Source: Lytechinus pictus
Taxonomy: Eukaryota
Length of the DNA stretch: 64,000 nt
Direction: 5' to 3'
NCBI RefSeq assembly: GCF_037042905.1
Contig: NC_087255.1
Coordinates: 31,992,001-32,056,000 of the forward strand
In this document: positions 1 to 45,485 of the stretch, one piece after another
How the letters are laid out: the number at the start of each line of letters is the position of its first letter
Numbering within the stretch: position 1 is the first letter of the stretch
Translations under genes and position numbers: made by a program
The notes under the pieces: generated by a model
The model's input: only the letters and a program-made list of their open reading frames with translations
Database searches by the model: none
What the model was told of the DNA's origin: nothing

Positions 1-268
1 GGCGGATCCAGGGAGGAGGTCAATTCGCCCCGTGCCCCCCCCCCCCTTGAGAGCCATAATCATAATTTTTAATGTAGATATATGCCGTTTTTACCCAAGT
101 GTGTCCCCACTTTTGAAAGTAAGGATTTTTTTTTGCTAGTCAAATTTTTCGCAGACGAATGACCTTCAATTAAGGTGAAAACGTTTTTTTTTCTTTTTGG
201 GCTTGTCAAATTTACATCGGGAAAACGAATGTGCCCCCACCCGTTGGAAAATCCTGGATCCACCCCTG
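1..268. mobile_element. hAT-like MITE, truncated by the window start
   Basis: GGCGGATCCAGG at 1-12 is the inverted match of CCTGGATCCACCCCTG ending at 268; TSD cannot be checked. Confidence 0.55.
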
Positions 269-3200
269 AACTGTATTAGTACATGTTTCACAGTCATGTT
301 AGCGGAGAACATCAAAGTAGCCGATTTCACTACCTACGCAAGGACTCAAAACTGGGACCTGGAGTTCCGGTCCTAGAGCTCCCCCACCTTTTTCAATAAA
401 CGTGTACAAAAATACAAAAAAGATACCATCTGATTTTATTATTTGTTTTTACATTAGACCCGACATTAGCCCCCCCCCCCCCCCCGGCCCCCCCTCCCAC
501 TGTAAGATCCGCTCCACTAGCCATTAGGGTATCAAATTAGGGGTTTCTCTTTTCATGTCCCTTTGGTCGCAGAATTAGAGCATAATTATCCTTCATATTA
601 CTTAGGGCTAAGAGTGGCTTATCTTGTATGTTACGCAATTTAGGGTTGCAAATTTGGTTATGCAGATTGCGCCGTTTTATTTCGGGTAGATCTCTAATGT
701 TTTTGGACACGGGTGGGTTGCCCGGTGCAGCCAATGTGGCGAGTGACCCCCGCCCCTCTCTCGCGGGGGTGGGGCACTTGTGCCGCAATGTTAAATTGGT
801 GATTATCCCTTTGAAAAATCACATCCCCTTGTCATTTTAGTACTAAAGTTAAATAATTCAAATCAAATTAGATGAATGTTCGAGTTTTACTCAGGTGTTC
901 ATAATGTGACATGCATGGACACGAAAATAAAGACATGATCTTAGCTTCATAGAAACGGTGATCATCATGTATTGATTGAAACGAATGGGCATGTTCAAGG
1001 ATATCATTTATCATCAAGGTGCATTTTCAATTGTTACGAAATAGTAAATAAATACCACAGTGTCCACAGGGTTGAGCCTCTTATGTTTACTCGAGACAAA
1101 GTACAGTCTTGAATAAAGTATACTCCCGTCCTCGTTCTGATCATAAAATCATAAAAAATATTTGAGTTAGCAGTTGGAAGAAATAGATATGCAAAGAGGT
1201 ATCCTCCCCTATTGAGTCAATATTTGATCCATCATAAAGAAAACGTGACATGTTTATGAAATACATATGGTTTACCTATAGCTGCTGGAGAGAAGAAGAA
1301 AATGAAAAGAGAAGTAAGAAAAAAAAAACGGAAACAAAAAAATATCTAGCAAAGGATTAGGAACAGCGACGAAATTTGGTGAATATCAGAAATGTAACTA
1401 GGGAGTAAAGAGATGATTGATCGGTTGCCAACAGCATATAAAGGATCACCCTCACAACTAAGGTGATGATGTTGGTGATAATAATAATAATTATTATTAT
1501 TATAAAAATTAATAACAATAATAATAATAGTGATAATAAAAACGATGATAGTGATAAAATAGAGAAGCAATTATTAGGCTTTTGCTCAATGTGGAAAACT
1601 TCCCCAACGACAAACGCGACTATTGAACGAAGTCAAAAGAAAGTAATCATTGTTAATAGTCTTGCTCGGCAAAACAAAGCGTACATAGAGTTACACATTA
1701 CACCCAAAAGTATCAGTTACCTAATGCCTCTGAATGACATGCAATACAGCATGAGCTTCTACCATGAAATAACTCGAAAAAAAAATTATTCCAAGCGACT
1801 GGGTCATGGTCTACCAGCCTTTCTACTCCATGGTTATTAGCACAATCTAGATTTCTTTATTGAAATATGATCAGCAGATCAGGGTCTCATTCCCTTTCAC
1901 CGATATATTAAAAAAAGGTATTTCTTTTCTACGTTCCATTGTGCCCTGCACTCTCTCGCTCCACTGCGAGTATGTGCTGGTTAATATTATACAGCATTTG
2001 ATATCAACAAAAACCTATTGTGTGGTTATGCAAAAAACATGTTTAGAAAGCGCAATTGCACTTTGGTCATATTTGAATTCGTTCATTGTCAGTGTGGAAA
2101 GTAGAAGGCGTGCAAATACTGGCCTCTCAAAAACGAGGGTCGCCAAGTCTTTATATATTTTCTTAATTCTTCCTCAGAACATGCCGCGAAATCGTGCAAG
2201 AAAGGGACTTTGGCCTTTGATCTTTCTTCTCTGTACCAAACACAATACTTCTGACGATCACAAATTAGTCAAGATCTGCTTTATAGGGCGTCACTGTCAC
2301 CTACAACCCCCCTTCCCTCTGAATAACTATCCTTTTTCGTCTTCTCTTCCTATCTCTGTGTCAGGCCACAACCGTTTCATCTCCTTACACAGTAAAAAAA
2401 ATAAAAATCACGCTGTTTAACCCGTCACTCTAACAACAATTTTTTTTACTTTTACACAATTGTTTAAGCTTTACGTTTTCAACATCTTGTTAAAAAAATC
2501 AAACATTGCACAATTAGAGTGACGGGCTTAAACAACCTGCTTGAAATATAAAACAGCGATTTTACGGTGTACATCGCTCATTGCTTTATTTCTCTGTTCA
2601 AATTAATAATAATTTAATTCATTTAATGCCCCGCCCCCTCTCTCTCTCTCTCCTTCCCTCTCAATTTCACCATTCTCCCCTCCCTCCTAACTCATTATCT
2701 TTGATCTTTTATCTTTAATCTGCTATAAGCATGGACGACCATTTCCTGATTTTTTGTGTCCATCTATATAGAGGGAAGGGAAAGAGATGACTCTCTTCAA
2801 CAGGCTCCTGTGAAAAAATTAAAAATCAAGGGAGCTACGTATGTCTCCCCCTCCCGTCTCTGGAATCGCCGCCAATGGTTATAATTATGTACTTCCATTG
2901 AGAAATAACCTTAATTGTTAACAAAAGACCTTGCCCCCCTCGATCGGTTTCTAGTCTGAATGCCTTCTGCATCTCCCAATTTTTTTTTTGTTTCCCCACA
3001 ATCGATTTTGCCGCAATAACTCAAATATTGACACGTTCTGGTGAAATGCTACCTAAAACAAAGAGAAAAAAAAAAGAGAATGCAAAGCTAATAATCGTAA
3101 AGAACCTGCGAGTAATTGTGGTTCTCTATCCTTCTGCACCCCTCCGGGGGTCACACCCCTATACAGTCACAGAAGGAAGTTATATCCGAACGATTCTAAA

Positions 3201-3396
3201 TCTTGTTTCATTAATTCGATTGATGACTGTCATATCAAGTCATATTCACCACCAACAATAAGCTGGTTTGGGTAGAAATAAACGTAAACAAAATGCACTG
3301 CAAGATATGAAGGGTCTACCATTTTTCATTTCACTTTCATAATAAAGAAGTAACCTTGTGGGCCGTACAAATGAGGGATTCGTGGAACTGAAAGAG

Positions 3397-4861
3397 CAAC
3401 CGCGTAGCCAGGATTTCATTTTGGAGGGGGCGGTAATCGCACGCGAAGCGTGCCAACACTTACAGAGCGCGCGAAGCGCGCTCCCTAGGGGGTGGGTGCA
3501 GGGAGGGGGAGTTTCCCGCGCGAAGCGCGAAGCTTTTGGTGTTTCATAAATTAAAATGAAAAGGAGCCGTCTCTCTTGTCTCTAGTACCTATATCACCCC
3601 CAGTTCAGTTGACAATATTGTGATTTTGAACCTTTTTTTCATGAACCTTATTTTCAAAAGTGATTGTGAGCGAACGCATAAAAGAGGAATACAATGGAGG
3701 AAATTAAAATAATAACCCCGCGCGAAGCGCGGAAGCTAAAGCGTTTTTTCAATTTTTTTCTGCCATGAAAAGGGTCCCGATAAAAGGGTATTTTCAAAGA
3801 TATATTGAATACTTCCCTTGGAAAGATCATATTTGATTACAAACAATTTAGCGACAGTGCATAACTCGCAAAACAGAGGAGAAGAAGTGTATATGCCGGG
3901 AGGAAGATATTCCTCCCCGCGCAGAGCAATGAAACTCTGAAGTTTCAAAGGGCGGACGTTTCATCAAATTCAGATATCTCTAATACCCCATCGGGTCTAA
4001 TTCGATTGATTTTCTAAGATTATTGAACTTCATTACAAGGAAAATAGTGCGCAAAAAGTTGAAACTTCTGTGATTCATTGAAATTATATAAAAAGGATGC
4101 CTAATTTCTTTGACTTATCCTGAAGCGCTTCATTTTGAATTATAAAGAACCCTAAGTGTCATTCAAAATTTCAAACTGAGTGCGCAAAACAGGACAAGAG
4201 ATGAATGTGCAGGGAAATGACATGTAGTTTAATAGAATATGATAATAAATATTGTACTTTTTTATCTAATACGACACGAATTTTATACCTTCCTTTTTTT
4301 AAATTAGGAACCTGTTTGCCCCAAAATTATGGTTGATTAGTAATGAGCTGAAAAGCAGGAGAAGTTGACTTTATGGAGGTGACGGCAGAAATTGATATAA
4401 AGATTTTACCCGCCCATGGCCGACCCGTCCAGAAGTTGCGCAATCAATTAAAAAAAAAAAGATAACTTCATATACTTCGGCCTAACCTTACTCTAATTCC
4501 ATGCCCTAATCTATACATTTGAACTTTAACTGGCAAGAAACACATATAGCTGAGGTGGAAAAGCAGAGTTAGAGAAAGGGTGGGGAAACAATGGAGAACT
4601 TCAATATTATCATTTAACCGCGCGCCGCGCGGTAGCAAAATTCATATATAAATTTAGAGCAAGAGAGAAGGAGTTTCTCTTTTGAGAAAAAAAATAAAGA
4701 ATAAAAAGAAAAAAAAACACAAAGCTACCTTTCTTCCCTTTCCTCCCTTCCCTTTTCCTTTTCTCCCCTCTTTTTTCCCTTCTTTTTTTTTTCTTTTTGG
4801 GGACGTTTTTTTTTGGGGGGGCGACCGCCCCCACCGCCCCCCCCCCCTGGCTACGCGCCTG
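3397..4861. mobile_element. Non-autonomous hAT-like DNA transposon, copy 1
   Basis: TIRs CAACCGCGTAGCCAGG / CCTGGCTACGCGCCTG; perfect 8-bp TSD TGAAAGAG (3389-3396, 4862-4869); second copy at 52221-53690. Confidence 0.9.
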
Positions 4862-5403
4862 TGAAAGAGGGATGTATTTCAACTCATAATAGATTTGAAA
4901 TAAAAAAAAACATTTTCACCATTAATATAACAACAGAGGAAATTATGATTTTATATAAAATCAATTACATTCTTGGAGGAATAGATAAAATATTCTTGAC
5001 GCATCAGTGCCTTCATTAGCCGTCCAAAAAATAGGGCCTCCATCAAAATAATGAAATCATGATGATCATAAACATAATCTCTGTACCGGGCTCTATACAC
5101 GCGGTGTTGTACTAAAAGAAATAAATCCATCAAAACTTGTAATTATCATTACCCTGGTGCAAATAAAAATATGCTCAAAGTAAAGATTACAAAGCAACAC
5201 CGGCGTATCTAGTTGGAGGGGTGGGGGCTTGGGGCAAAGAAACCGACGAAATTTACAGCACGACTCAAGAAAAAAGGAACAGAAAAAAAGGAGGAAAATT
5301 GTGAAATGTGATGTTTCTTTCTAAATATTTCCCCTATGATATACATGCAAAAATACATGTATGTCCTAAAATGTTTCAAATGTTCGCTCGCTTGTGAACT
5401 TAA

Positions 5404-5997
5404 AGGGGAATCCAACCCAAATAAAAACTTGTTTTTATAAGAAAAAGAAAAATCAGACAAGTTGATAGGTGAAAGTTTGAACAATATTGGACAAACACCA
5501 AGAAAGTTATGAATTTTTAAAAGTTGTAAATATTGGTAATCACTATACTCATGGAGACTTCAAATTGGCCGCATATGGTATGTCATAGTGATGTAAGGCA
5601 AGGACTACTCTTCCATGTACTCCAATACATATTATGGCTAAAATGTCATTTTCCCAAAAGTTTTACTTCAAATTATATTTTTCTTTCATGAGGACACTAA
5701 ACAATATACTACCTGGGTTATATTTATATTACTGCCCCAGGGGAATGGGTACCTAGGAGAAAACCACAAATCCCTGATAATAAAGTACATGGCCTATGGG
5801 AAAGTTGTCCTTGCCCCTTGTCATAATTTACTTACCCAGTTGCCAATTTGAAATGTACATACTATTAGTGATCTCAATTTTAAAGCAGCTATAACTTTCT
5901 TATTGCTTGTCCGATTTCTTTCAAACTTTCACCATTCTGTTTGATTTATTTTTCTCCTTCCCAACAAACCATTTTATGGCCAAGGTTGGATTCCCCT
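5404..5997. mobile_element. TTAA-targeting MITE (Kolobok-like)
   Basis: TIRs AGGGGAATCCAACC / GGTTGGATTCCCCT with TTAA on both sides. Confidence 0.75.
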
Positions 5998-6304
5998 TTA
6001 AAGAAATCTTGCCCTATATTCCATATTATATCCCCTCATGTTTTCTTTGCCTGAATACGTGACATAAAGAGACTGCATAATCATAACAGGAAGTATGTGG
6101 TTCCAACTCTATATCGCATCTCTTGATTTGAAGTACGGTTCAGAAAGTAAACGCGATGACCAATTAAGTTCATTGTTGCATCCTGCTTTAATATTGTCTA
6201 ACATAGACATTCGACCAATCAGAATGGTTGTTTTTCATTTGTATTTGATTATAATTCTTATAATCTGCCTATTGATTTTTATTCATTTTTTTGTTACATA
6301 ACAG

Positions 6305-6348
6305 CTGTGCCTACCTGTGATGTTTCTACAGGCATTTCCAAAACGGAA
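6305..6348 (+). CDS. Collectrin-like protein exon (xVPTCDVSTGISKTE)
   Basis: T-rich tract plus CAG acceptor, GTGAGT donor; phase 1 in, phase 0 out. Confidence 0.6.
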
Positions 6349-6982
6349 GTGAGTATAGAATTTTCTTGGTTTAATTTTTATCATGTGCACATGTTCCTAT
6401 CTAGCATAGCATTTTTCATTTATTTCATATTAAATCCATGCAAAAATAAATAAATGGAATACTCTAAACTGTAAAGGCTTTGTTTGAAATTTTAAGCGCG
6501 TTTTTTGTAAGCCCGTATTTTGTTTAAACTCTATTAAAAATATTTGATCATTGTTTAAATGGTTAAAGTTTGTAAACAACTTGTTAAATACTATAAACAA
6601 TAGTTGTTAGAGTGACGGGCTTAAACGATGTGCTTAAATTATGGAATACACTCTAAAAAAAAAGGATTGGTCAAATTACCATTATCTTAGTTAATAATGT
6701 GTCTGACCGAGTTTCTAAACAATAATTTGGTCAATTTTTGGCATTTTTCTTGGTCGGATTAACCAAGAGAATTGTGATTTTGACCAATCTCTTTTAAGAG
6801 TGACTCCGTTCTCCCAGTGGGCCGGCCCTACATAACCGCATTATCATCAGTTCTTCTTACAGCAATTGCTGAGCCTGGTCTACGAACATAATTATGACGA
6901 ATTGTATTTTCTAATACTAGGGTAATATTAAGATCATTCATAAATAATTCCTGTTATTTTATTCCTTGTCCTATCTATACAG

Positions 6983-7039
6983 TGTGATGAATACGTCGCT
7001 GCTGGTGCCATAACTGTGACATTCGACGGCAAATCCGAC
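6983..7039 (+). CDS. Collectrin-like protein exon (CDEYVAAGAITVTFDGKSD)
   Basis: TACAG acceptor, GTAAGT donor; 57 nt, phase 0-0; GC-richer than flanks. Confidence 0.75.
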
Positions 7040-7559
7040 GTAAGTATAAACATTTATATTCTTTTTGGTTATGATATTTTATCAAACAATGAAAGAAAGA
7101 AGGTATATACAAAAGCGATACGTCCATAACGAGTAAAAAACATGGGTTTTATGCACGTGGTATAAATATTTTTTTTAAATTAAGTCGTATCGTCTTCGTT
7201 ACATGGGTTTCACGGTTATTAATCACAAGATATTATATTTTATATCAGATTTTTAAAATGACTTTAACATATCAAAAAAATAACGTTCATAAGAATGATA
7301 ATTTTTCTCCTCCCAAACTACAAGGAAACTTGCTCAGAACTCCGATGTGATTCAGATGTTGAATATCAAATGGTTTTATTGTGAATTGATCCATATTTCG
7401 TTCGCAAATTATATATATAGTACATTTCAAAGGCTGTTTTAAACTGCCAACTATGGATGACATTATACTCAAGGATTTTCCCGTAATGAAGGACAATTAT
7501 CTCTCATTCGATAATTCATTGAAATCTTTATCTTTCGTCTATATTGGGTTTTTTTTTAG

Positions 7560-7639
7560 GCTTTAACTGATGTGGAAACGGAACTCTTCAAAGAAGTCAT
7601 CGCTAACGTGACCAACGACTATGTTTTCCTTCCAGTTTT
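7560..7639 (+). CDS. Collectrin-like protein exon (ALTDVETELFKEVIANVTNDYVFLPV)
   Basis: Poly-T TAG acceptor, GTAAGT donor; phase 0-2; NVT sequon. Confidence 0.8.
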
Positions 7640-8032
7640 GTAAGTAAAATTCTGGTTGGTATTTCATAAAGCTGTTCGTAAAGTTACGCACGACTGGAAC
7701 ATGTTCTTAGGTCATAAATCAACTTCATAGGGATATCACATAGCACAAAAAAGGATCACCAGTCGTGCGTAAAGTCATTCGTATCTTACGAACAGCTGTT
7801 ATGAAACACCCTCTGGGCTACAGGGCCTATAGGGTACACAACTGAGCAAGAAATAGCTAGGTCATGCTTCTTGATATGGGGAAAGGGGCAAAAGTTTACA
7901 TAAGTACAAGATAAGAAAAAGGTAGAAAAGGGTCAAACGTCAGAACTATATATGGAAGCACTTTCCCGTTAAAAAAATGCGCCAGTGCACCTCCCCCCCC
8001 CCAAAAAAAAAAAAAATATACATATATATATA

Positions 8033-10069
8033 CACAACAAAAAAAGTAAGTCCCCCTTAAACAAACATCAATAATTTCCGAACCAATGCGAGTTTTTAAT
8101 ATATTTTTACATGAGCGTGTAGGTAATTTTATAAGCTATCTTCTGAGTAAATGTTATGGACATATTTTACGTCATGCTTCAGTGAGCACCGTCAGAAGGC
8201 AAAAATGTCACTTTTCAAAAGTCACAAGCCAAATATCATTACTTTGATTCCATTTTATTGGAACTAATTCCACATTCTCATCATGAAAAATAGTCAGAAG
8301 GCTTGAAAAAAGGTACTTTCTAAAAGACGATACAACTTTTTTTGGATAAATTTCACGGTTGAATAAACACAAGTCCAAATTTGCTATAATTAGATTTTTC
8401 ACACATTTCTATAAATAAAAATGATAGAATATGATGACAGTTATTTTTTAGAAGAGTATCTTCAGCAATATTCATCGATTCACGGTTCAATAAACATTTA
8501 TTAAATACAAAAATAAGATTTTCAAATATCATAGGCATATATTGTTTCATTTTGGTAACTGAAAATGACCTTTTCTCAACTGTTTCGTTATGTTCATGAC
8601 CAATTAACATGCTTCAATGATTCAAAGGCGTTTAATTAAACATTCACGCTTGAATGAACATGTGGAATGTGATTAGCTCTTTTTTACGTTATTGGAAAAA
8701 ATGCAATTTGTAACTATGGATATCTGTCACAAACCTCCATGCATAGTTCATTTGATTTGATTTTTATGAAAATCCCGATGTTTAATGCATCAGTGAGCAC
8801 ACAATATTCGAAAATTATGCAAATAAGAAGAAAGTTCAAGGCCTTGGCGGCTTGGTTATTTGGAATGGTTATTTTGGTGTGCGCGCCTTTTGGATATAGT
8901 GTTACTCTGAAGCCATGTGCGAAGTTTCATGAAATAACTGTTGGCAGAAGTAACAAAAACCGTCCATGAAACAAACCCTCATTTCATATTTGTTAAAATT
9001 TTGAATTCCTCTCTCATAGACTTGTGTACATTATCATTTATGGGTGCATATGTTTAAGAATAAGTAACCCCTTTTTTCAAGGCTGTCTTTAGCAATGTCA
9101 TTTGGCAGTAATGTTTATCAACCCATGGGCAGAATTCTGTGCAAAAATGAAATCGATTTGTTTATTTATGGATGAGTGAGCACGCATCAAAGTGGGAAAA
9201 TTGGTATTTTCAATCATTTTAAAGGGTAATAAAGTGAATATTGGGGGCAAATTCGGTTTGAAATGTGACTTTAATTGCTGTGTTTTTATCATCCATCATT
9301 TCTATCATCACACAATTTCCGAACTTTAACAGTTTTCATGGTTGAGCGAGCACATTCGAAAACTTAGGAATGAATACTCTTTACACTGCATAAATGTATT
9401 CTTTTTCTAACAATTTCTCATGATCAGTTTAATTTATGGACAAATCAGTGGTGGATCCAGAATTTTAAAATGGGGGAGGGGTCTATAATCGGGGGAGACA
9501 CCAACATTTTCAAATTTTAACATGATCTAACAAGTTGTAGAGGATACTACCATAAACTCGGCCCTATGATAATACCTCACAATACAGGGGCCGCGGAACG
9601 GTTTTCAAAGTGGGAGAGGGGGGGCTGACCATGCAAAAAATCACAATCGTATGGTCATTTTTACATTTTTGTACATGCTTTTGGAAAAAAGTGGGGGGCT
9701 GAGCCCCCCCCCCCTTCCGCGGCCCCTGCAATACATTCAATCACTCAACCATGAACATACGATATTAAAATTGTGTGAAGTGGCTAAATGATGGATAGTA
9801 AAACAGCATAACACCATAAAATTCACCTAAAAACAACTTTTGCCCAACTTTGTATTTGCACAATCTGAAAAACGACTCTTGTGACTTTAAAAAATGGTCA
9901 TTTTCAATTCAATCTTTAATCACTCATGCATGACTCAACCGATCAATCTCATTTTTCACCAGGAGTTGCTTAATGAGTGTAGAAAACCACCTACGAAATA
10001 TATCTCAAAATAATTCCGTTCAAAAATTACAGCAATTTGATTTAGGGGGGAATGACTTTTTTTGTTGTG
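8033..10069. mobile_element. Non-autonomous TA-flanked TIR element (Tc1/mariner-like)
   Basis: TA-CACAACAAAAAAAGT ... ACTTTTTTTGTTGTG-TA; no transposase ORF. Confidence 0.6.
9585..9728. mobile_element. MITE with 5-bp TSD (hAT5-like), copy 1
   Basis: TIR CAGGGGCCGCGGAA; TSD CAATA; inverted sister copy at 39135-39286. Confidence 0.8.
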
Positions 10070-10462
10070 TATATATTACATTTTTAAAATTCTCTTTCTT
10101 TTTCTAATTTGCTCTGAGGCAATGTGAGCATCTAATTATAGTTCATTTCAACGGCATTAAGGCAAAACTTTATGCGGTAAACAAGATTACATCCATACAA
10201 ATAAAATTCAATTAATATCAGATTCAGATTATCTTATTTAAATGGTGAGCGGGAAAAAATCATTAAAATTTTCAATTTTTAATATAACATAACATCTAAC
10301 ATTTTATCTAACATCTTTTTAATGATATTTTCAATTTTGACTTTCACATTTCAGAATGTGTTTCTTGCATGTTTATCATCCCCTCCCCCCTCCCCCCCCC
10401 CCAAAAAAAAAATATTAATAAATATAAATATCGTTACTACCCTTTTTACTTATTCAAATTAG

Positions 10463-10777
10463 CCCAGAGCATGTGATCATCGTGCAGCGTGTTCGTAACA
10501 CCGCAACCGATGAATTCGGCCTTGTGTTCTTCGTGCGTAACCCATCCCTTTCCGAGTTCATGCCCGTAGCACTCCGCAGGCAGGAGCTATACCTGATGGT
10601 GAAGCTAAACAACGGTATGATCAACGAATATCTTGGTCCCGGTTTGGCCATCACTGCCCAGGAGCCCCCATCTTCGTACCCATTGGCTATTCCAGCTTGG
10701 GCGATAGCTATCATTGGCTATGTCGGGCTGATTATCTTCATCTACTGCATCATGGTGTTGACTAGTGATTGGAGAAG
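10463..10777 (+). CDS. Collectrin-like protein exon containing the transmembrane helix
   Basis: PEHVIIVQ...FFVRNPS...IPAWAIAIIGYVGLIIFIYCIMVLTSDWRR; TTAG acceptor, GTATGT donor; phase 2-2; overlaps ORF 10473-10796. Confidence 0.9.
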
Positions 10778-11370
10778 GTATGTGGGCGAGGTTTAGATGG
10801 AATGCAAGGGATGGCCCCTCCCCCCCCCCCCCACCACTTCCTGAAAAAAAATCCCCAAATCACTTGATGGTGGTCATGATGATGACAGAAATCATAATTA
10901 TTATTATAATAATGTTCGATATAAATAGAAAATCATTACTTCCACTACTACCAATAGATATAACAATAATGATGATCATGATCATAATAATAACAATAAA
11001 TATAATGATAATAATGATAAAGTGCTTAGAGAAATTCTAATAGATGCTATATAAATATATTGAATCATTATCATTATAAATCATAATACATATGATAATA
11101 ATAATGGAGATGATACTAATGCTTGGAGTAATAAAATGGCAATGATGATGAGCCCAGTGAAAATATTGTTATTAAGACATCACACATGAACTATTCCCCA
11201 ATACAAGTCATAGGTATTCCCTATTTGGGGTGAAACACAAATTTGTCTAAAGTCACGTTATGTGCCTATTTACGAATCAAGCAGGAAATGTCCAGAACAA
11301 AAATATTTTTATCATCAGCCTACTTTATTCAATTCTGTTTAGTACTATGTACTCTATTTCATCCCGATAG

Positions 11371-11572
11371 GAAAAAGTCTGAAGAGTTTGAGGCAAGTCT
11401 AGAGAAGGAGTACTATAACAATACAAATGGAGTGACTGCAGCAGGTGATGAGATACCAATGAAGAAGATACCAGCTAACAATGACTACCAGGAGATTACA
11501 GAGACCAAGAAGAATGATGGACTGTCCAAGATATCCATAGGAGTACAAACGCCTCGTCATGTCGCTGTTCAG
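11371..11572 (+). CDS. Collectrin-like protein, cytoplasmic exon (KKSEEF...HVAVQ)
   Basis: ATAG acceptor, CAG|GTAAGG donor; phase 2-0; basic stop-transfer RRKK spans the junction. Confidence 0.85.
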
Positions 11573-11719
11573 GTAAGGGAAGACCATCAAGCTACCATTC
11601 ATTCTAACATGGGGGGCATTTTATGAAACAAATTGTCAATGACTTTTAAAGCTAACAAGGAAAAAATATATCAGTGGAAAATCACTGACTGTTTATTTCA
11701 TAAAACACTCCCCAGTTGG

Positions 11720-13250
11720 CTATAAATAATAGGTTTCTTGGCAATCCACGTCAAACCACTAGTGATGAATATCTTATGGGTAATAGGTTTCTTGACAATC
11801 CAAGTCAAACCACTGGTGAGCAATATCTTATGGGTAATAGGTTTCTTGGCAATCCACGTCAAACCACTAGTGATGAATATCTTATGGGTAATAGGTTTCT
11901 TGACAATCCAAGTCAAACCATTGGTGAGCAATATCTTATGGGTAATAGGTTTCTTGACAATCCAAGTCAAACCACTGGTGAGCAATATCTTATGGGTAAT
12001 AGGTTTCTTGACAATCCAAGTCAAACCACTGGTGAGCAATATCTTATGGGTAATAGGTTTCTTGACAATTCAAGTTAAATTATATGTCATCAATATCTTA
12101 TGGGTAATAGGTTTCTTGGCAATCCACGTCAAATCATAGGTGAGCAATATCTTACGGGTAATAGGTTTCTTGACAATCCAAGTCAAACCACTGGTGAGCA
12201 ATATCTTATGGGTAATAGGTTTCTTGAGAATCACAGTTAAACAACAGGTGATCAATATCTTATGGGTAATAGGTTTCTTGACAATACAAGTTAAACCATA
12301 TGTGATCACTTTCTTATGGGTAATAGGTTTCTTGACGATACAAGTTAAACCAAATGTGATCAATATCTTATTGGCAATAGGTTTCTTGACAATCCAAGTT
12401 AAACCATATGTGATCAAAATCTTATGGGTAATAGGTGTCTTGACAATCCAAGTTAAACCATATGTGATCAATATCTTATGGGTAATAAGTTTCTTGACAA
12501 TCCAAGTTAAACCATACATGTGATCAATATCTTATGGGTATTAGGTTTCTTGACAATCCAAATTAAACCACAGGTGATCAATATCTTATGGGTAATAGGT
12601 TTCTTGACAATACAAGTTAAACAATATGTGATCAATGTCTTATGGGTAATAGGTTTCTTGGCAATCCAAGTCAAACCACAGGTGATCAATATCTTATGGG
12701 TAATAGGTTTTTTGACAATCCAAATTAAACAATGGGTGATCAATATCCTATCAGTGATAGGTTTCTTGACAGTCTATGTCAAACCACAGGTGATCAAAAT
12801 CTTATGGGTAATAGGTTTCTTGACAATCCAAGTTAAACCACAGGTGATCAATATCTTATGGGTAATAGGTTTCTTGACAATACAAGTTAAACCATATGTG
12901 ATCAATATCTTATGGGTAATAGGTTTCTTGACAATCCAAGTTTAACCACAGGTGATCAATATCTTATGGCTAATAGGTTTCTTGACAATACAAGTTAAAC
13001 CAAATTTGATCAATATCTTATTGGCAATAGGTTTCTTGATAATCCAAGTTAAACCATATGTGATCAAAATCTTATGGGTATTGGGTTTCTTGACAATCCA
13101 AATTAAACAACGGGTGATCAATATCCTATCAGTGATAGGTTTCTTGACAGTCCATGTCAAACCACAGGTGATCAATATCTTATGTGTAATAGGCTTCTTA
13201 ATGAATGAGATCAATGCCATAATGGACAATTCAAGCCAACAATAGGTGAA
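11720..13250. repeat. Intronic 54-bp minisatellite, about 28 copies
   Basis: Unit about ATGGGTAATAGGTTTCTTGACAATCCAAGTTAAACCACAGGTGATCAATATCTT; period 54 (e.g. 11776, 11830). Confidence 0.95.
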
Positions 13251-13760
13251 CAGGTGAAGTTACTCAATAATCCAAATAATATCAAATAAGATTCTGGAGC
13301 ACAAGGTTTGTGAAACAATTACGTGACCTCATGGCAATGAGGTTTCTTTGCGAGCATTTCAATTAATTCCATATGTAATCAATGTCTCACAGGCATATGT
13401 TTTCAGTTGTGACAGTTCAATAATTTATACTTCAAAACTCTATCTTTTAAAGATATTGTATCAAGACAATTGACCAGTCAAAAAATTCAGATCTTATATT
13501 TTGAGGGATTTTAGGTTTGATTAAACATGTATATCATCCATTAATTTGAACAATCCATACTCCAAGAGTCATTTTTAGACACAAATGGCATTCATATATG
13601 CCAGAAGGGAATTTCTGTAACTCCATTAAACACCTATAATCAAAATGTATGGAATTGGGTTTTTTTTTTAAAATGTCATTCCAGGGCAACCATAAGTGAT
13701 CGAAGACCTATTTTTAGATATATCTAACCCACCCTTGTTTTCCACATCTATCCCTTCTAG

Positions 13761-14036
13761 GTTGACCCAGATGATATAGTAGGTGGTCAGTCTTCGCCCG
13801 CTCCGAGTCAGACAAGCACCACAGAAGTGGTGATCGAAAATGGCCATTCCACGATCGATGACGAACCTGCATACGACTCCCCAGATATTCCAGACACTGC
13901 CCCCATCGTTACTCATACAAATGAAGGCGACGCCGATAAAGAAGCCGATGATGCAGCGGCGGCTATAGAGGGCGCTTTAAATGAAGGTTTTGCAGAGGAT
14001 GAAACGGACGTTGCTCAACCTTCCACGAACCTCTAG
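13761..14036 (+). CDS. Collectrin-like protein, terminal exon (VDPDD...GALNEGFAEDETDVAQPSTNL*)
   Basis: CTTCTAG acceptor, phase 0, in frame with ORF 13827-14036; TAG stop. Confidence 0.85.
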   Translation, partial: VDPDDIVGGQSSPAPSQTSTTEVVIENGHSTIDDEPAYDSPDIPDTAPIVTHTNEGDADKEADDAAAAIEGALNEGFAEDETDVAQPSTNL

Positions 14037-38728: not shown

Positions 38729-39663
38729 CAGGGGTTCTCAAACTTTTTCTTTGAAGGGCCAGATGAGACTCCGAGTAAACCTGAAAGGGCCAGGGTGAAG
38801 TGGATACTTAGAAAACAAATGTGCGCGAAGCGCAAAGACCTTTGCAGTCGGGGTCCGAGATGCTCTCTTGTGCAATCTGGTCCTTATTTTGGGAGCATTT
38901 AATCCAACAAATTTATAACAGTTTCATATGGAACGCAGGCAAAATTAGAAAAGATTTCAAAAAACATCGAGAGTCAATATTAATGATAACAAATTGTAGT
39001 ACTTTGTAAAGAGGAATCTAGATTGTACCTTTATATACCTGGTATATGGGAAACGTGACAGTCTGTCAGCAACAAAAGGCACAAAAGGTGTAATTGCCAG
39101 ACGAAGGCACTGGTGCAAATGTTCACTAGTCAAGCAGGGGCCGCGGAAGCGGGGGGGTGTTCAGCCCCCCCCCCCCACTTTTTTCCAAAACCATGTACAA
39201 AAACGTAAAAATGACCATATGATTGTGATTTTTTGCATGGTGCAGCCACCCCGGCCCCCACTTTGAAAACCGTTCCGCGGCCCCTGTCAAGGTACTTCGA
39301 TATGAGTTAGTTCTTTTAAATGTTCATAGTGGAAAATACACTTTCGCACCTGTATGTAGATCCAAACATGGTGAGAACAGCGCTGGTCATCTAATATAGA
39401 TCGAACAGACAGAAAAAACTCCACTAAACTTTGTTTAAAAGTCAAATTAATTTGACTGCCATTACTTTTATTACGGTTAGGTCTACATGGATACACAATG
39501 ATTATATTGATTATATTGATTACATTGATTATATGATTATATTGAGCTTTGTTTCATATTGTGACTTAAAGTTATTTTTAAAAAACCAGCAGAGTCTCGC
39601 GGGCCGGATTGAGAAGCTCCACGGGCCGGATCCGGCCCGCGGGCCGTAGTTTGAGAACCCCTG
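38729..39663. mobile_element. Non-autonomous hAT (Charlie-like) element
   Basis: TIR CAGGGGTTCTCAAACT; 8-bp TSD TTCTACAT; subterminal GGGCCG motifs. Confidence 0.9.
39135..39286. mobile_element. MITE with 5-bp TSD (hAT5-like), copy 2, nested in the hAT element
   Basis: TIR CAGGGGCCGCGGAA; TSD TCAAG. Confidence 0.8.
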
Positions 39664-39954
39664 TTCTACATAAACCAACATAAACATCCTCTATAAATTT
39701 GGACCACTGTGGTCCCGCAAGCAATAGTGACGAACGTGAGAAGAAAATTGGGGAAAAACAGGAAGAACAATAATAATAATAATAATAATAGCTGTATTTA
39801 TAAAGCGCCTTTTGCCCGAGGATACAAAGCGCTGCTATTATTACCCCGGCTTTAGCTCGAGCTACCATCACCGGCGCAATAATACATATAAGAGGGAAAG
39901 AGAGGGTGAAATATAAAGAAGATGGGAACTGTGTGGGAGATGCGAGGTAATTAC

Positions 39955-40131
39955 TTGAAGGACATTGACTTTCTTGAATACAACGACCATTAACACGATC
40001 CCGGATGAATCCCTTGGCGTGATCACAGATGCATCTTGGTTTTATTTCTTGGTCCGCACCACCGCATACAGGCTCGGCACAGTCTAATCCGCAAGATCCT
40101 GTATCCAGGATCATCCCTGGACCACACGGAT
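39955..40131 (-). CDS. TIL14 exon (8 Cys, no C5-C6 loop)
   Basis: PCGPGMILDTGSCGLDCAEPVCGGADQEIKPRCICD...CIQESQCPS; TTCTAG / GTAATT; 177 nt, phase 1-1. Confidence 0.85.
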
Positions 40132-41013
40132 CTAGAAGGAAGAAGCAGGGATTAAATGGTGTGTAAGGGATGAAAAGAGCAAGATACAAGGAACAAGAAA
40201 TTTGATGGAATTCATGAACATACAAATTCAACTTGGATGTCTAACCTGTGCTCCATGCAGGAAAAATAAGAAGTAACCATAGGAACATTATGCTGACCGA
40301 TCTGTGGCATTTTAATGCAGATGCTCGTAAGTCAGGCATGACTTTACAAACAGGTGACCTCTTTCTTGTGCTAAATGAGATTCCCCAGGGATTCTTTCTT
40401 TAAACACAATGAGAGTAAATGGAACCAAATATTGATAAACAACAAATACTGCATACTAATGCTGATTAACAAGAATTCGCATCTAAAAAGGTCAAATTTT
40501 AAACTTTAGCTGATAGGAATAGAAGTATTGATAATTGATCTGGTACAAGAAAAGTTTTTCAGAGTTCCATAAAGTCCCGTGTATCTTACAAACAGCTTTA
40601 TGAAACATCACCCTACATGTAGTATTGAAATCTGTGCAAGTGATCTGTGTTTACATATAGACCTAGATGTAGCCTGCACAGATAGTTCCACGGAAGCAAC
40701 AACAAAATCAGCAGACTTTGAGTTGTACATTCACAACACCCCTCATTCATTTCTCAGTGCATTGTTGTTTTCGTTCTAAAAATTGCAGAGTGAATAAAAA
40801 TTGTGTTTTTTTTTTTAAGAATGACATAGAGAAAGTTGGCTTGAATGGTATTCAAAAAAGGAGAAATGACAGGAGGAAAAGCAAGATGGAGAATAAATGT
40901 TGCAAAGAAAACACAAGAAAAAATTGACAAAATGAAGAAGAAAAGACCCCCAGGAGAGGGGGTAGAAGAAATAAACAGAAACACTGAGGTCATAGGAAGT
41001 TGGAGTCACTTAC

Positions 41014-41190
41014 TTGTTGATGGACATTCACTTTCCAGAACACATCGACCATTTTCATCGCGTAAGAACCCATCGTCACAGAAACATCCTTCAACACAAA
41101 GAGTAATGCAGAACTGTTCCTCATCTTTATTCTCACAAGTTTTTGGACAGGCTGATCCACAGGATGTGTAGGATTCATTCTCCCCACAGC
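41014..41190 (-). CDS. TIL13 exon (tandem copy 9)
   Basis: 177-nt CGENESYTSC...CPST; TAG / GTAAGT. Confidence 0.85.
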
Positions 41191-41353
41191 CTACAGTGGG
41201 AATATAACAGATGTAGAAAGAACATTGGTGAATATCCTGAGAGACAGATGGGATGACAAAAGACAGCCAAGATAGGTATGAAAGGAGGAGAAAAGGGAAG
41301 TCAAAGAGATAAAAACAGAAACACAGAGGCCATGGGAAGTCAGAGTCACTTAC

Positions 41354-41530
41354 TTGTTGATGGACATTCACTTTCCAGAACACATCGACCGTTTTCATCG
41401 CGTAAGAAACCATCATCACAGAAACATCCTTCAACACAAAGAGTAATGCAGAACTGTTCCTCATCTTTATTCTCACAAGTTTTTGGACAAGCTGAGCCAC
41501 AGGATGTGTAGGATTCATTCTCCCCACAAT
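41354..41530 (-). CDS. TIL12 exon (tandem copy 8)
   Basis: 177-nt repeat exon, intact splice sites. Confidence 0.85.
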
Positions 41531-41693
41531 CTACAGAGGGAATATAACAGATGTAGAAAGAACATTGGTGAATATCCTGAGAGACAGATGGGATGACAAA
41601 AGACAGCCAAGATAGGTATGAAAGGAGGAGAAAAGGGAAGTCAAAGAGATAAAAACAGAAACACAGAGGCCATGGGAAGTCAGAGTCACTTAC

Positions 41694-41870
41694 TTGTTGA
41701 TGGACATTCACTTTCCAGAACACATCGACCGTTTTCATCGCGTAAGAAACCATCGTCACAGAAACATCCTTCAACACAAAGAGTAATGCAGAACTGTTCC
41801 TCATCTTTATTCTCACAAGTTTTTGGACAGGCTGATCCACAGGATGTGTAGGATTCATTCTCCCCACAGC
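41694..41870 (-). CDS. TIL11 exon (tandem copy 7)
   Basis: 177-nt repeat exon, intact splice sites. Confidence 0.85.
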
Positions 41871-42033
41871 CTACAGTGGGAATATAACAGATGTAGAAAG
41901 AACATTGGTGAATATCCTGAGAGACAGATGGGATGACAAAAGACAGCCAAGATAGGTATGAAAGGAGGAGAAAAGGGAAGTCAAAGAGATAAAAACAGAA
42001 ACACAGAGGCCATGGGAAGTCAGAGTCACTTAC

Positions 42034-42210
42034 TTGTTGATGGACATTCACTTTCCAGAACACATCGACCGTTTTCATCGCGTAAGAAACCATCATCACA
42101 GAAACATCCTTGAACACAAAGAGTAATGCAGAACTGTTCCTCATCTTTATTCTCACAAGTTTTTGGACAGGCTGATCCACAGGATGTGTAGGATTCATTC
42201 TCCCCACAGC
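42034..42210 (-). CDS. TIL10 exon (tandem copy 6)
   Basis: 177-nt repeat exon, VQG variant. Confidence 0.85.
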
Positions 42211-42373
42211 CTACAGTGGGAATATAACAGATGTAGAAAGAACATTGGTGAATATCCTGAGAGACAGATGGGATGACAAAAGACAGCCAAGATAGGTATG
42301 AAAGGAGGAGAAAAGGGAAGTCAAAGAGATAAAAACAGAAACACAGAGGCCATAGGAAGGTGGAGTCACTTAC

Positions 42374-42550
42374 TTGTTGATGGGCATTCACTTTCCAGAA
42401 CACATTGACCGTTTTCATCACGTAAGAAACCATTGTCACAGAAACATCCTTTAACACAAAGAGTAATGCAGAACTGTTCATTATCTTTATTCTCACAAGT
42501 TTTTGGACATGCTGATCCACATGATGTGAAGGATTCGTTCTCCCCACAGC
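42374..42550 (-). CDS. TIL9 exon (tandem copy 5, most diverged)
   Basis: 177-nt repeat exon, CAG acceptor; several amino-acid variants. Confidence 0.85.
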
Positions 42551-42903
42551 CTGCAGAGAGCGAATAAAACAAATGAAGAAAAGACATTGGTGAATCTTAG
42601 AAAACAGTGGAGGACAGGAAACAGCCAAGATCTGTAGAAAGGGAGGAGAAAGACAGACAATTTTTTTTTTTTTTTAAGGCTAATTTTCACAACTTACTGC
42701 ATAATTATGCTACATTGGATAAGCTTTAACATTGCAGTAAACGGGGATTTTCCACGGTTCCTTTTGTAAGTTTCCATAGCTTTTTAAAGCATTTCTGGGG
42801 CTAAATTGCCCCAGCCCATGTGTAATTTTTTTCCCTGGAGAAAAAGAAAGTCCAGGCGAAATGAACAGAAACAATGAGGCCATAGGCAGGTGGAGTCACT
42901 TAC

Positions 42904-43080
42904 TTGTTGATGGACATTCACTTTCCAGAACACATCGACCGTTTTCATCGCGTAAGAAACCATCATCACAGAAACATCCTTCAACACAAAGAGTAATGCA
43001 GAACTGTTCCTCATCTTTATTCTCACAAGATTTTGGACATGCTGATCCACAGGATGTGTAGGATTCATTCTCCCCACAGC
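42904..43080 (-). CDS. TIL8 exon (tandem copy 4)
   Basis: 177-nt repeat exon, PKSC variant. Confidence 0.85.
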
Positions 43081-43242
43081 CTACAGTGGGAATACAACAA
43101 ATGAAGAAGACATTGTTGAATATCCTTATAGAAGATGGGATGACAGAAGACAGCCAAGATAGGTATGAAAGGAGGAGAAAGAGGAAAAGTCGAAGAGATA
43201 AAAACAGAAACACAGAGGCCATGGGAAGGTGGAGTCACTTAC

Positions 43243-43419
43243 TTGTCGATGGACATTCACTTTCCAGAACACATCGACCGTTTTCATCGCGTAAGAAACC
43301 ATCGTCACAGAAACATCCTTCAACACAAAGAGTAATGCAGAACTGTTCCTCATCTTTATTCTCACAAGATTTTGGACAGGCTGAGCCACAGGATGTGAAG
43401 GATTCGTTCTCCCCACAAT
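43243..43419 (-). CDS. TIL7 exon (tandem copy 3)
   Basis: 177-nt repeat exon, ESFT and PKSC variants. Confidence 0.85.
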
Positions 43420-43584
43420 CTACAGAAGGAATAAAACAAATGAAGAAAAGACATTGGTGAATATCCTTAGAGACAGATGGGATGACAGAAGACAGCCAAG
43501 ATAGGTATGAAAGGAGGAGAAAGAGGAAAAGTCAAAGAGATAAAAACAGAAACACAGAGGCCATGGGAAGTCAGAGTCACTTAC

Positions 43585-43761
43585 TTGTCGATGGGCATTC
43601 ACTTTCCAGAACACATCGACCGTTTTCATCGCGTAAGAACCCATCGTCACAGAAACATCCTTCAACACAAAGAGTAATGCAGAACTGTTCCTCTTCTTTA
43701 TTCTCACAAGTTTTTGGACAGGCTGAGCCACAGGATGTGTAGGATTCATTCTCCCCACAAT
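43585..43761 (-). CDS. TIL6 exon (tandem copy 2)
   Basis: 177-nt repeat exon, KEEEQ variant. Confidence 0.85.
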
Positions 43762-43924
43762 CTACAGAGGGAATACAACAAATGAAGAAGACATTGTTGA
43801 ATATCCTTATAGACAGATGGGATGACAGAAGACAGCCAAGATAGGTATGAAAGGAGGAGAAAGAGGAAAAGTCGAAGAGATAAAAACAGAAACACAGAGG
43901 CCATGGGAAGGTGGAGTCACTTAC

Positions 43925-44101
43925 TTGTTGATGGACATTCACTTTCCAGAACACATCGACCGTTTTCATCGCGTAAGAACCCATCGTCACAGAAACATCC
44001 TTCAACACAAAGAGTAATGCAGAACTGTTCCTCATCTTTATTCTCACAAGTTTTTGGACAAGCTGAGCCACAGGATGTGTAGGATTCATTCTCCCCACAA
44101 T
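43925..44101 (-). CDS. TIL5 exon (tandem copy 1)
   Basis: 177-nt repeat exon, intact splice sites. Confidence 0.85.
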
Positions 44102-44901
44102 CTACAGAGGGAATACAACAAATGAAGAAAAGACATTGGTGAATATCCTTATAGAAAGATGGGATGACAGGAGACAGCCAAGATTGGCAGAAAGGGAGAA
44201 GGTGGAGAAGTCCAAAAGACATAAAAACAAGACATCACATTACCTAATTTCTCCAGGATGCCATGTCAAAATCTCTGCTCACGCTTCTGTTGTTAATCAG
44301 AATTGAAAACTAAGTTTAAATGGAAAAACGCAATTCAAAACTTCATTTTTTCATTTTTTTTTTTCATTTTTATGTGCCATTTTGAGAAATTAACCAGCAA
44401 TTATTAATTCTTTATTCCCTTCAGCAGGTCTATTCAAATCGCTGACAATTTCACCAATTTTGGTGCATAGAACTCATAAGCAAACCCTAAATAGCTGCAT
44501 GCATGGGCGCACATAATATGAAAGATAGTCTCAATCGAGGGGGGGAGGGGATAACTTTTACACTTGATGGCTTGTTATGTCTGGAGAGAGACATAAAAAT
44601 AGATAAATGAATAAATGTGAAGTCAATGGTATATATTCCATGCACCTTCAGAATGTATTAAACAAACCAAGGTCCTATTTCAGAAAAACTTGTTATAATA
44701 ACAAATTTGCGATAACAGTTACAAGCTTACTGAAATCATTCAGTTTGATTGGCTGATACTATTTAAACTTATTAAAAAGAAATTGGGCAATTTTTATTAC
44801 AACAAATCTTTATTCAACGGGACCAAATACAATGACACCTTTAAGTGTTCTTTGAGGTCATTAGCACTACTGAGGAAAATAATTTGCTTTCACGAACTTG
44901 C

Positions 44902-45003
44902 GCTTGGACATTCCTCTGGTGGAACGCATGGTCCGTCTTCAACCAAACGGACAAATCCTTCTTCACAGAAGCATCCAGCCACACATTGGAGAGTGCAGAT
45001 GAC
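44902..45003 (-). pseudogene. Relic half TIL exon ([34 protein letters not shown])
   Basis: Only C5-C10 present; N-terminal half missing; followed by GCAAGT rather than a phase-1 GT donor. Confidence 0.7.
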
Positions 45004-45314
45004 ACTCTGCTTAAATTTGGCCAAGATTAACTAATAGATAAGTATCAATTAAATGTGTAAATGAAAGGAGAGAGGAGGTGAGAAGACTATTAAGATGAAA
45101 GACACTGAAAATGGTGAAATTAAAATAAACAATGAGAAAAATGATAAACAAAATTATATGGATGTAGGGGGGGGGAGTGTTTCATGAAACATCAGTGATT
45201 TTCATTGACAAATTTGATCTAAGCCAATGAGAAACAAGTATTTCAGTAGTTTATAAGTTATTTAGTGAAAATCAATGACTATTGTTTCTTAAAATGAATC
45301 CCTGATCTGCTTAC

Positions 45315-45485
45315 CTGGATCTGGACATTCTGCTTCCAGAACACATCGACCGTTTCCATCGCGGACATATCCGTCATCACAAACACATGATTCTTCACAA
45401 TTCAGAGGACATGGGAGTTTTTGGTTCTTATTTTCACACGTCTTCTGACAGGCTTCGCATCCAGGAGACTCGTTCTCTCCACAAA
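45315..45485 (-). CDS. TIL4 exon (loop CPLNC)
   Basis: 10-Cys TIL; TGTAG / GTAAGC; 171 nt, phase 1-1. Confidence 0.9.

What the first reader, a model, noticed from the sequence alone, without database searches (positions are those of the whole stretch)
6305..14036. Candidate invertebrate collectrin / ACE2 collectrin-like-domain homologue
Seen: the spliced product is ...TDVETELFKEVIA...FPEHVIIV...LVFFVRNPS...QELYLMVKLNNGMINEYL...PLAIPAWAIAIIG[TM]VLTSDWRRKK...VVIENG...GALNEGFAEDE...STNL*. Recalled from memory of human collectrin (needs verification): DTNEEYLFKAMVA, SHVLL, FWFVVTDPS, VEVQSAIRMNKNRINNAF, PSVPIWIIIFG, LILSGIWQRRRK, MITIENG, GHINDAFMTEDE. All eight blocks match in the same order. 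Established: collectrin and the ACE2 C-terminal domain chaperone SLC6 amino-acid transporters such as B0AT1/SLC6A19 and are mostly described from vertebrates. Inference: this is an invertebrate family member, suggesting that the module which fused with ACE to give ACE2 predates vertebrates.
Basis: partly seen in the sequence, partly recalled or inferred. Interest (0 to 1): 0.85.

Follow-up and report, generated by a model that had tools for sequence, protein, structure and literature searches.

The report
Sea urchin collectrin-like membrane protein gene
This sea urchin gene is real, is copied into RNA and is conserved across echinoderms. It encodes a small single-pass membrane protein whose predicted shape most resembles collectrin and the collectrin-like part of ACE2, but every sequence-profile test for that family was negative.

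Summary
Exons 2-7 of a seven-exon + strand gene lie at 6305-14036. All junctions laid (2/3 to 5/6) appear in RNA contigs from two studies; 6/7 lay outside the stretch laid and rests on GT..AG plus the orthologue. The product is 90.7% identical to Lytechinus variegatus LOC121424351. Exon 1 (signal peptide) lies upstream of the window.

Orthologues, all named "uncharacterized" with no Pfam domain, occur in sea urchins, a sea star, a sea cucumber and crinoids.

The collectrin reading is partly supported:
- **For:** AlphaFold models (pLDDT 84 and 88) show a ferredoxin-like domain, a linker and a TM helix. Foldseek ranks ACE2 chains first in the PDB. In Swiss-Prot it ranks collectrin and ACE2 residues 614-770 first (E about 1e-5). 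A shape search of the ESM Atlas and a language-model feature search also put collectrin clusters first.

Verdict: probably a remote homologue of collectrin (about 0.55). A transporter-chaperone role is inference only. This scan had noted the same stretch once before (s1-325033).

The parts
6305..6348 (+). Coding exon 2. It follows a phase-1 intron, and exon 1 lies off the window. It encodes the mature N-terminus, AVPTCDVSTGISKTE, with the first conserved Cys.
   Evidence: tblastn with P0001. RNA contig joint 6348>6983, GT..AG. Sequence read directly.
6983..7039 (+). Coding exon 3. It holds the second conserved Cys, the N-terminal helix and the first strand of the domain.
   Evidence: joints 6348>6983 and 7039>7560. 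Model secondary structure.
7560..7639 (+). Coding exon 4. It holds the long helix (LTDVETELFKEVIANVTNDY) and the conserved N-x-S/T sequon (NVT). It ends in phase 2.
   Evidence: The sequon column (A-N-x-S/T) is near-invariant in the family.
10463..10777 (+). Coding exon 5. It holds the rest of the ferredoxin-like domain, the linker and the transmembrane helix, and ends in phase 2 inside the juxtamembrane WRR-K.
   Evidence: Exon 5 and its junctions stand in RNA contigs of X1 and X15 laid here; its 31-mers are also indexed in further RNA-labelled runs.
10695..10766 (+). Transmembrane helix, AWAIAIIGYVGLIIFIYCIMVL. The outer-leaflet half is nearly invariant across echinoderm classes (L155, P158, W160, I164 and Y167 in P0001 numbering). 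The inner half is variable.
   Evidence: Model helix 139-167. Column conservation.
11371..11572 (+). Coding exon 6. Cytoplasmic tail, part 1, including a YxxPhi motif (YQEI) and the conserved VQTPRHVAVQ stretch.
13761..14036 (+). Coding exon 7 with the stop codon. Acidic tail carrying VVIENG, the conserved AAAxEGAxNEGF-acidic block and the C-terminal STNL.
14022..14033 (+). C-terminal S-T-N-L. It fits the class I PDZ-ligand pattern x[ST]x-hydrophobic-COOH. The T and the L are invariant in the seven full-length tails aligned.
   Evidence: Alignment A4. Motif definition from bioRxiv 10.1101/2020.10.06.327742.

Best explanation
The window holds exons 2-7 of an expressed, echinoderm-wide gene for a type I single-pass membrane glycoprotein.

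Shown here:
- The mature protein starts with a two-cysteine N-terminal helix.
- A membrane-adjacent ferredoxin-like domain of about 105 residues follows, carrying one conserved N-glycosylation sequon.
- A short linker and a TM helix come next. The outer half of the helix is almost invariant.
- The cytoplasmic tail is about 155 residues, acidic and poorly conserved outside a few motifs (so probably disordered). In order it carries a YxxPhi motif, an NxxF/Y-acidic block and a class I PDZ-ligand C-terminus.

Inferred:
- It is a remote homologue of that family, too diverged for profile HMMs.
- It works the same way. The neck domain and the conserved face of the TM helix would pack against a multi-pass partner, most plausibly an SLC6 nutrient amino-acid transporter, or against a second copy of itself.
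- The tail motifs would tie the complex to apical PDZ scaffolds and to endocytic adaptors.
For: - **Gene and product:**
- **Conservation:** sea urchins, Acanthaster, Apostichopus and two crinoids. The TM outer half and the C-terminal block are invariant or nearly so.
- **Models:** pLDDT 84 and 88, with a four-helix ferredoxin-like fold, a linker and a TM helix. This matches the ACE2 collectrin-like domain as described in PMC7164635.
- **Foldseek, PDB:** ranks 1-11 are ACE2, E 2.6e-5 to 3.7e-3.
- **Foldseek, Swiss-Prot:** ranks 1-11 are collectrin (Q9HBJ8, 1.1e-5) and ACE2 residues 614-770. The next named family is about 100-fold weaker.
- **Crinoid replicate:** ACE2 at ranks 1-5.
- **ESM Atlas, shape:** ACE2 and collectrin clusters first for the urchin model, and second and third for the crinoid model.
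- **Language-model features:** collectrin clusters at ranks 1-2, score 0.91.
- **Architecture:** among the named matches only collectrin has the same stand-alone layout. The others are large multidomain proteins.
- **Tail:** it has the same three kinds of motif, in the same order, as tested in ACE2.
Against: - Pfam Collectrin gives no hit at E<=10 for any member.
- phmmer and hmmsearch against PDB sequences never recover ACE2.
- For the crinoid model CELSR1 is only about 6-fold behind the best ACE2 chain.
- In AFDB clusters a nematode protein and two cnidarian proteins outrank collectrin.
- The feature search shares 167-169 features, just under the 170 that the tool says is typical of same-family hits.
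- The ACE2 tail 19-mer aligns to the urchin C-terminus with p about 0.15, and not at all in other members.
- The tail is about 155 aa, against about 40 aa in ACE2.
- No ACE-like gene lies next to it, here or in S. purpuratus.
- There is no functional or interaction evidence at all.
Confidence: 0.55

Rival explanations
1. A lineage-specific echinoderm membrane protein that simply uses the widespread membrane-adjacent ferredoxin-like (MAD/SEA-like) fold next to a TM helix. It would have no specific common ancestry with collectrin and no transporter-chaperone role. It could be an adhesion, signalling or mucin-like surface protein.
For: - There is no HMM-level similarity to any family.
- FAT4, KIAA0319 and PTPRN domains are among the close shape matches.
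- Identity in the structural alignments is 18-24% for ACE2 and collectrin, but 20% for CELSR1 and 21% for PTPRR.
- The Foldseek margins are only one to two orders of magnitude.
Against: - Four different rankings place collectrin or ACE2 first, ahead of every other named family: Foldseek on PDB, Foldseek on Swiss-Prot, Atlas shape and Atlas features.
- This holds for two models 43% identical to each other.
- The stand-alone architecture with a PDZ-ligand tail is that of collectrin, not of cadherins or phosphatases.
Confidence: 0.33
2. A member of an older, metazoan-wide family of small proteins built as one membrane-adjacent domain plus a TM helix. This family would also include nematode F13C5.5-like and cnidarian 'mucin-like' proteins. 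Vertebrate collectrin would be only one branch, so the echinoderm gene need not be the direct counterpart of collectrin.
For: - The top AFDB-cluster matches are a 192-aa nematode protein (E 2.3e-6) and cnidarian proteins of 270 aa (E 1.6e-5) and 416 aa (E 2.1e-5), ahead of collectrin (E 3.4e-5).
- C. elegans F13C5.5 (219 aa) follows directly after the collectrin/ACE2 block in Swiss-Prot.
- Cnidarian clusters score 0.90-0.92 in the feature search.
Against: - These proteins share only 13-20% identity in the structural alignments.
- No sequence search linked them to the echinoderm family.
- They were not examined further here.
Confidence: 0.1
3. Not a functional gene: a pseudogene, or a chance assembly of open frames.
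For: Two rRNA-depleted RNA runs of the same species show no reads over the exons, with about 6% of each run read.
Against: - The spliced frame is intact at 324 aa.
- Spliced RNA contigs appear in two studies.
- Orthologues exist in four echinoderm classes, with invariant positions.
Confidence: 0.02

Closest known systems
Collectrin (TMEM27; Pfam PF16959), 222 aa, vertebrates
   Same: - It is a stand-alone type I protein: one ferredoxin-like ectodomain next to the membrane, one TM helix and a cytoplasmic tail.
- It is the best Swiss-Prot structural match (Q9HBJ8, E 1.1e-5, residues 23-170 aligned to 145 residues (23-167) of the 168-residue model, 20% identity).
- It is the top language-model feature hit.
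   Different: - The Pfam Collectrin model gives no match.
- The echinoderm protein is about 345 aa, with a tail of about 155 aa.
- It has an N-terminal cysteine pair and a differently placed glycosylation sequon.
- Its function is untested.
- The collectrin sequence itself could not be fetched, so no residue-level comparison was verified.
Collectrin-like domain of ACE2 (residues 616-768: neck domain, linker, TM helix; PMC7164635)
   Same: - It has a four-helix ferredoxin-like neck followed by a linker and a TM helix.
- The tail carries YxxPhi, NxxF and class I PDZ-ligand motifs in the same order.
   Different: - There is no peptidase M2 domain in the gene or nearby.
- Tail similarity is at motif level only, and not significant (p about 0.15).
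- No HMM hit was found.
Membrane-adjacent domains (MAD) of PCDH15, CDH23, CELSR and FAT cadherins
   Different: - Those domains follow long cadherin arrays, whereas this protein has nothing else outside the cell.
- Identity is 12-14% for PCDH15.
- Foldseek E-values are weaker than the best ACE2 chain: about 160-fold (CELSR1, 4.2e-3) to about 2,500-fold (PCDH15, 6.5e-2) for the urchin model, and about 6-fold for CELSR1 with the crinoid model.
- There is no PF23206 hit.
C. elegans F13C5.5 and similar small nematode and cnidarian type I proteins (uncharacterised)
   Same: They have a similar size and layout. Foldseek E runs from 2.3e-6 to 1.3e-4.
   Different: Identity is 13-20%. They have no known function. 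No sequence link was found.

Membership tests
Collectrin family (Pfam PF16959: TMEM27 and the ACE2 collectrin-like domain) | Significant match to the Pfam Collectrin profile | tested here: not met
   There was no Collectrin hit at E<=10 for the window exons, for five representatives or for all 10 aligned members.
Collectrin family (Pfam PF16959: TMEM27 and the ACE2 collectrin-like domain) | Type I topology: signal peptide, one TM helix, cytoplasmic C-terminus | tested here: met
   The orthologues start with a hydrophobic leader, MKTLL...VNGQ; this exon lies off the window. A single hydrophobic helix is modelled at residues 139-167. It is followed by basic juxtamembrane residues and an acidic tail. 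No dedicated signal-peptide predictor was available.
Collectrin family (Pfam PF16959: TMEM27 and the ACE2 collectrin-like domain) | Ferredoxin-like neck domain, then a linker, then the TM helix (ACE2 616-768; PMC7164635) | tested here: met
   Two models (pLDDT 84 and 88) show this arrangement. ACE2 residues 614-770 and collectrin residues 23-170 align over the whole model.
Collectrin family (Pfam PF16959: TMEM27 and the ACE2 collectrin-like domain) | Closer to collectrin/ACE2 than to other membrane-adjacent ferredoxin-like domains | tested here: inconclusive
   [not shown]
Collectrin family (Pfam PF16959: TMEM27 and the ACE2 collectrin-like domain) | Binds SLC6 transporters (B0AT1, B0AT3, SIT1) and brings them to the cell surface | not testable with these tools
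   This needs co-expression or binding assays, or at least a complex prediction.
Cadherin membrane-adjacent domain (PCDH15_12th, PF23206) | Profile match, and a position after cadherin repeats | tested here: not met
   There was no Pfam hit. The mature ectodomain holds only this one domain.
SEA domain (PF01390) | Profile match, and a G/S-V-V-V type autoproteolysis site | tested here: not met
   [not shown]

The most novel reading that the evidence does not exclude
A stand-alone collectrin existed in the deuterostome ancestor, or earlier if the nematode and cnidarian look-alikes belong with it. It would already have served as the membrane partner of SLC6 nutrient amino-acid transporters. The fusion that made ACE2 in vertebrates would then have captured a working transporter-chaperone module. 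Echinoderms would keep the ancestral unfused form, which could be tested directly.
Probability: 0.25. Interest if true: 0.7.

Novelty: new variant of a known kind. Interest (0 to 1): 0.45.

Why it matters
Collectrin and the ACE2 collectrin-like domain control the surface expression of B0AT1-type amino-acid transporters. They are described essentially from vertebrates. In the literature searched here, invertebrate transporters of this group are said to reach the membrane without such partners (PMC8310414).

An echinoderm counterpart would:
- date the module before the vertebrate ACE2 fusion;
- give "uncharacterized" genes in at least seven echinoderm species a testable function;
- offer a simple system for asking what the unfused module does.

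The evidence so far is structural resemblance, not proof of ancestry or function. The general idea that the domain predates vertebrates is already implied by a 2024 domain-shuffling survey (PMC11788884).

Tried and rejected
- **Pfam scans** of single exons, five representatives and all ten members found no Collectrin, SEA, KIAA1549 or PCDH15_12th hit.
- **PDB sequence searches** found only noise. Queries were exon 5, the ectodomain + TM profile and the C-terminal tail profile.
- **Protein searches.** One phmmer scan of 1.84 billion representatives and three word-indexed searches found only echinoderm proteins. One call failed because max_evalue is capped at 10. They gave no bridging sequence and no collectrin id, so hhalign against a collectrin profile could not be run.
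- **Literature searches for collectrin or ACE2 sequence strings.** Two found nothing useful. A third gave only two ACE2 tail peptides.
- **ACE2 tail 19-mer against echinoderm tails:** not significant.
It gave z 7.3 for the window and 2.7-6.2 for other members, with a control at 0.8. I do not count it as a test. The blocks are unverified and were chosen because they match. A first version timed out.
- **Exon 1:** not in the window, by ORF and splice scanning or by similarity to S. purpuratus exon 1.
- **An ACE-like neighbour:** none found. The downstream neighbours are TIL-domain genes, both here and in S. purpuratus. Nothing else was called within 10 kb in Apostichopus.
- **PMC4591816** (collectrin-transporter interaction) is not held.
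- **One literature query** was badly designed and returned nothing relevant.
Full report
**1. What is in the sequence**

The region 6305-14036 holds six coding exons on the + strand: 6305-6348, 6983-7039, 7560-7639, 10463-10777, 11371-11572 and 13761-14036. With the one base carried over from an upstream exon, they join into an uninterrupted 324-aa frame.

The product is 90.7% identical to residues 21-344 of Lytechinus variegatus LOC121424351 (P0001). tblastn with that protein finds exactly these exons.

Residues 1-20 of the orthologue, the signal peptide MKTLL...VNGQ, have no counterpart in window 1-6300. This holds both by ORF and donor-site scanning and by similarity to exon 1 of S. purpuratus. 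In S. purpuratus intron 1 is 5.4 kb. Exon 1 therefore lies upstream of the window.

**2. Transcription**

Exon 5 is held by contigs of many RNA-labelled runs of the same species, and partly by a related species. I laid two such runs from different studies on 6200-11690. In each, one long contig carries four joints:
- 6348>6983 (GT..AG)
- 7039>7560 (GT..AG)
- 7640>10464
- 10775>11369 (GT..AG with the cut shifted by 2)

The 7640>10464 joint means the RNA reads ...TTTTG|CCAGAG. The assembly, spliced GT-AG, would give ...TTTT|CCCAGAG. This is most simply a C/G polymorphism at 10463.

Two deep rRNA-depleted runs had no reads over the exons in the 6% sampled, so expression is not ubiquitous.

**3. 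The family**

A phmmer scan of 1.84 billion representatives with exon 5 found five related clusters and nothing else convincing. Word-indexed searches named the sources:
- Sea urchins: Lytechinus variegatus, Strongylocentrotus purpuratus, Diadema antillarum
- Sea star: Acanthaster planci
- Sea cucumber: Apostichopus japonicus
- Crinoids: Antedon mediterranea, Anneissia japonica

All are called "uncharacterized" or "hypothetical" and have no precomputed Pfam domain.

The alignment shows these conserved features:
- two N-terminal cysteines;
- an A-N-x-S/T sequon;
- an NPSGS...PVAFR..ELYL core;
- an almost invariant outer half of the TM helix (L155, P158, W160, I164, Y167; positions 160, 164 and 167 fall on one helical face);
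- a variable inner half of the TM helix;
- a long acidic tail with a YxxPhi motif;
- a conserved block AAAxEGAVNEAF-acidic;
- a C-terminal [ST]-T-x-L.

**4. Sequence-level tests of the collectrin idea**

All were negative.
- Pfam Collectrin (PF16959) gives no hit at E<=10 for the exons, for five representatives or for all ten members.
- Exon 5, the ectodomain + TM profile and the tail profile do not find ACE2 among PDB sequences.
- No tool returned a collectrin sequence, so no profile-profile comparison could be run.
- Two ACE2 tail peptides printed in bioRxiv 10.1101/2020.10.06.327742 were joined into a 19-mer. It aligns to the very C-terminus of the window protein, but with p about 0.15, and it does not align there in most other members.
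They are unverified and were selected because they match, so I treat this as a lead only.

**5. Structure-level tests**

AlphaFold2 models were built on the 10-sequence alignment for the L. variegatus orthologue (residues 21-188, pLDDT 84) and the crinoid Anneissia (residues 22-183, pLDDT 88). Both give a four-helix ferredoxin-like domain, a linker of about 12 residues and a long TM helix. This is how Yan et al. describe the ACE2 collectrin-like domain: a ferredoxin-like neck domain (616-726), a linker and a TM helix (PMC7164635).

| Search | Result |
|---|---|
| Foldseek, PDB, urchin model | Ranks 1-11 are ACE2 chains, E 2.6e-5 to 3.7e-3 |
| Foldseek, PDB, crinoid model | Ranks 1-5 are ACE2 (6.9e-5 to 3.7e-4); CELSR1 at 4.0e-4 |
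| Foldseek, Swiss-Prot models | Ranks 1-11 are collectrin (human Q9HBJ8, 1.1e-5) and ACE2 residues 614-770; then C. elegans F13C5.5 (1.3e-4), a coral mucin-like protein and KIAA1549 (about 1e-3) |
| ESM Atlas, shape | ACE2 and collectrin clusters first (urchin) or second and third (crinoid) |
| Atlas, language-model features (no structure used) | Two collectrin clusters at ranks 1-2, score 0.91, 167-169 shared features |

The limits are as follows.
- Against AFDB fold clusters a nematode protein (2.3e-6) and two cnidarian proteins outrank collectrin (3.4e-5).
- For ACE2 structures lacking the TM helix, the E-values (1.7e-3 to 3.7e-3) are about the same as for CELSR1 (4.2e-3).

**6. Reading**

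The fold is the membrane-adjacent ferredoxin-like domain shared by collectrin/ACE2, the cadherin MADs, IA-2 and, more distantly, SEA domains. Within that class, every method that uses sequence information together with structure, or learned sequence features, puts collectrin/ACE2 first. The margin is small. Among the named matches only collectrin shares the stand-alone architecture.

I therefore regard remote homology to collectrin as the best single explanation (about 0.55). A generic, unrelated use of the fold comes next (about 0.33). Membership of a broader, older family of small proteins comes third (about 0.1). It fails the formal Pfam membership test, so I do not file it as a member of PF16959.

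**7. Mechanism (inferred)**

By analogy, the neck domain and the conserved outer TM face would form an interface with a multi-pass partner or a second copy. The tail would supply, in order, a YxxPhi endocytic signal, an NxxF/Y-acidic block and a class I PDZ ligand. These are the kinds of motifs, in the same order, that were tested in the ACE2 tail. Nothing here tests binding to SLC6 transporters. SLC6 genes exist in this genome according to earlier notes.

**8. Context and novelty**

There is no peptidase M2 exon in the 6 kb upstream of exon 2 or the 50 kb downstream of the stop codon that the window holds. The neighbours at 39-48 kb on the minus strand are TIL-domain genes, and the same neighbour is seen in S. 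purpuratus.

Only one paper in the library mentions both collectrin and sea urchin or amphioxus. It lists the ACE2 Peptidase_M2 + Collectrin pair among vertebrate pairs formed by shuffling domains that are also present in invertebrate outgroups. A pre-vertebrate origin of the domain is thus implied there, but without naming a gene. The echinoderm family itself appears unannotated.

Noticed in passing
window 10463 (exon 4/5 junction; also 7640): RNA contigs from two studies read G where the assembly, spliced GT-AG, has C. The codon is Leu (TTG) in RNA and Phe (TTC) from the assembly, and the orthologues have Leu. This is probably a polymorphism or an assembly base. The alternative is a non-canonical TA..GC intron.
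   Followed up: partly
window 11727-13199 (intron 6): A tandem array of a 54-bp unit, 27 copies, 87% matches. It creates long spurious ORFs on both strands (ILWVIGFLTIQVKP-type repeats).
   Followed up: partly
window 7650-7800 and 9500-9700 (intron 4): Very high depth in all four runs laid (X1, X15, X19, X20), with many 'opposite strands' joints and loose ends. These are probably transcribed dispersed repeats or a small foldback element, not part of this gene's mRNA.
   Followed up: no
window 39578-47964, minus strand: Exons for TIL (trypsin-inhibitor-like cysteine-rich) domains. Near-identical units of about 340 bp repeat between 41006 and 44098. A TIL gene is also the downstream neighbour of the S. 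purpuratus orthologue.
   Followed up: partly
window 10380-10405 and 10815-10830: Poly-C/poly-A tracts lie upstream of exon 5 and a poly-C tract lies about 40 bp downstream. RNA contigs and reads appear cut at 10374-10436.
   Followed up: no
Swiss-Prot O76565 (C. elegans F13C5.5); AFDB clusters A0A0M3K8U1 and A0A6P8HHF1: Small uncharacterised nematode and cnidarian type I proteins resemble the model as closely as collectrin does. They may be further stand-alone proteins with a collectrin-like domain.
   Followed up: no
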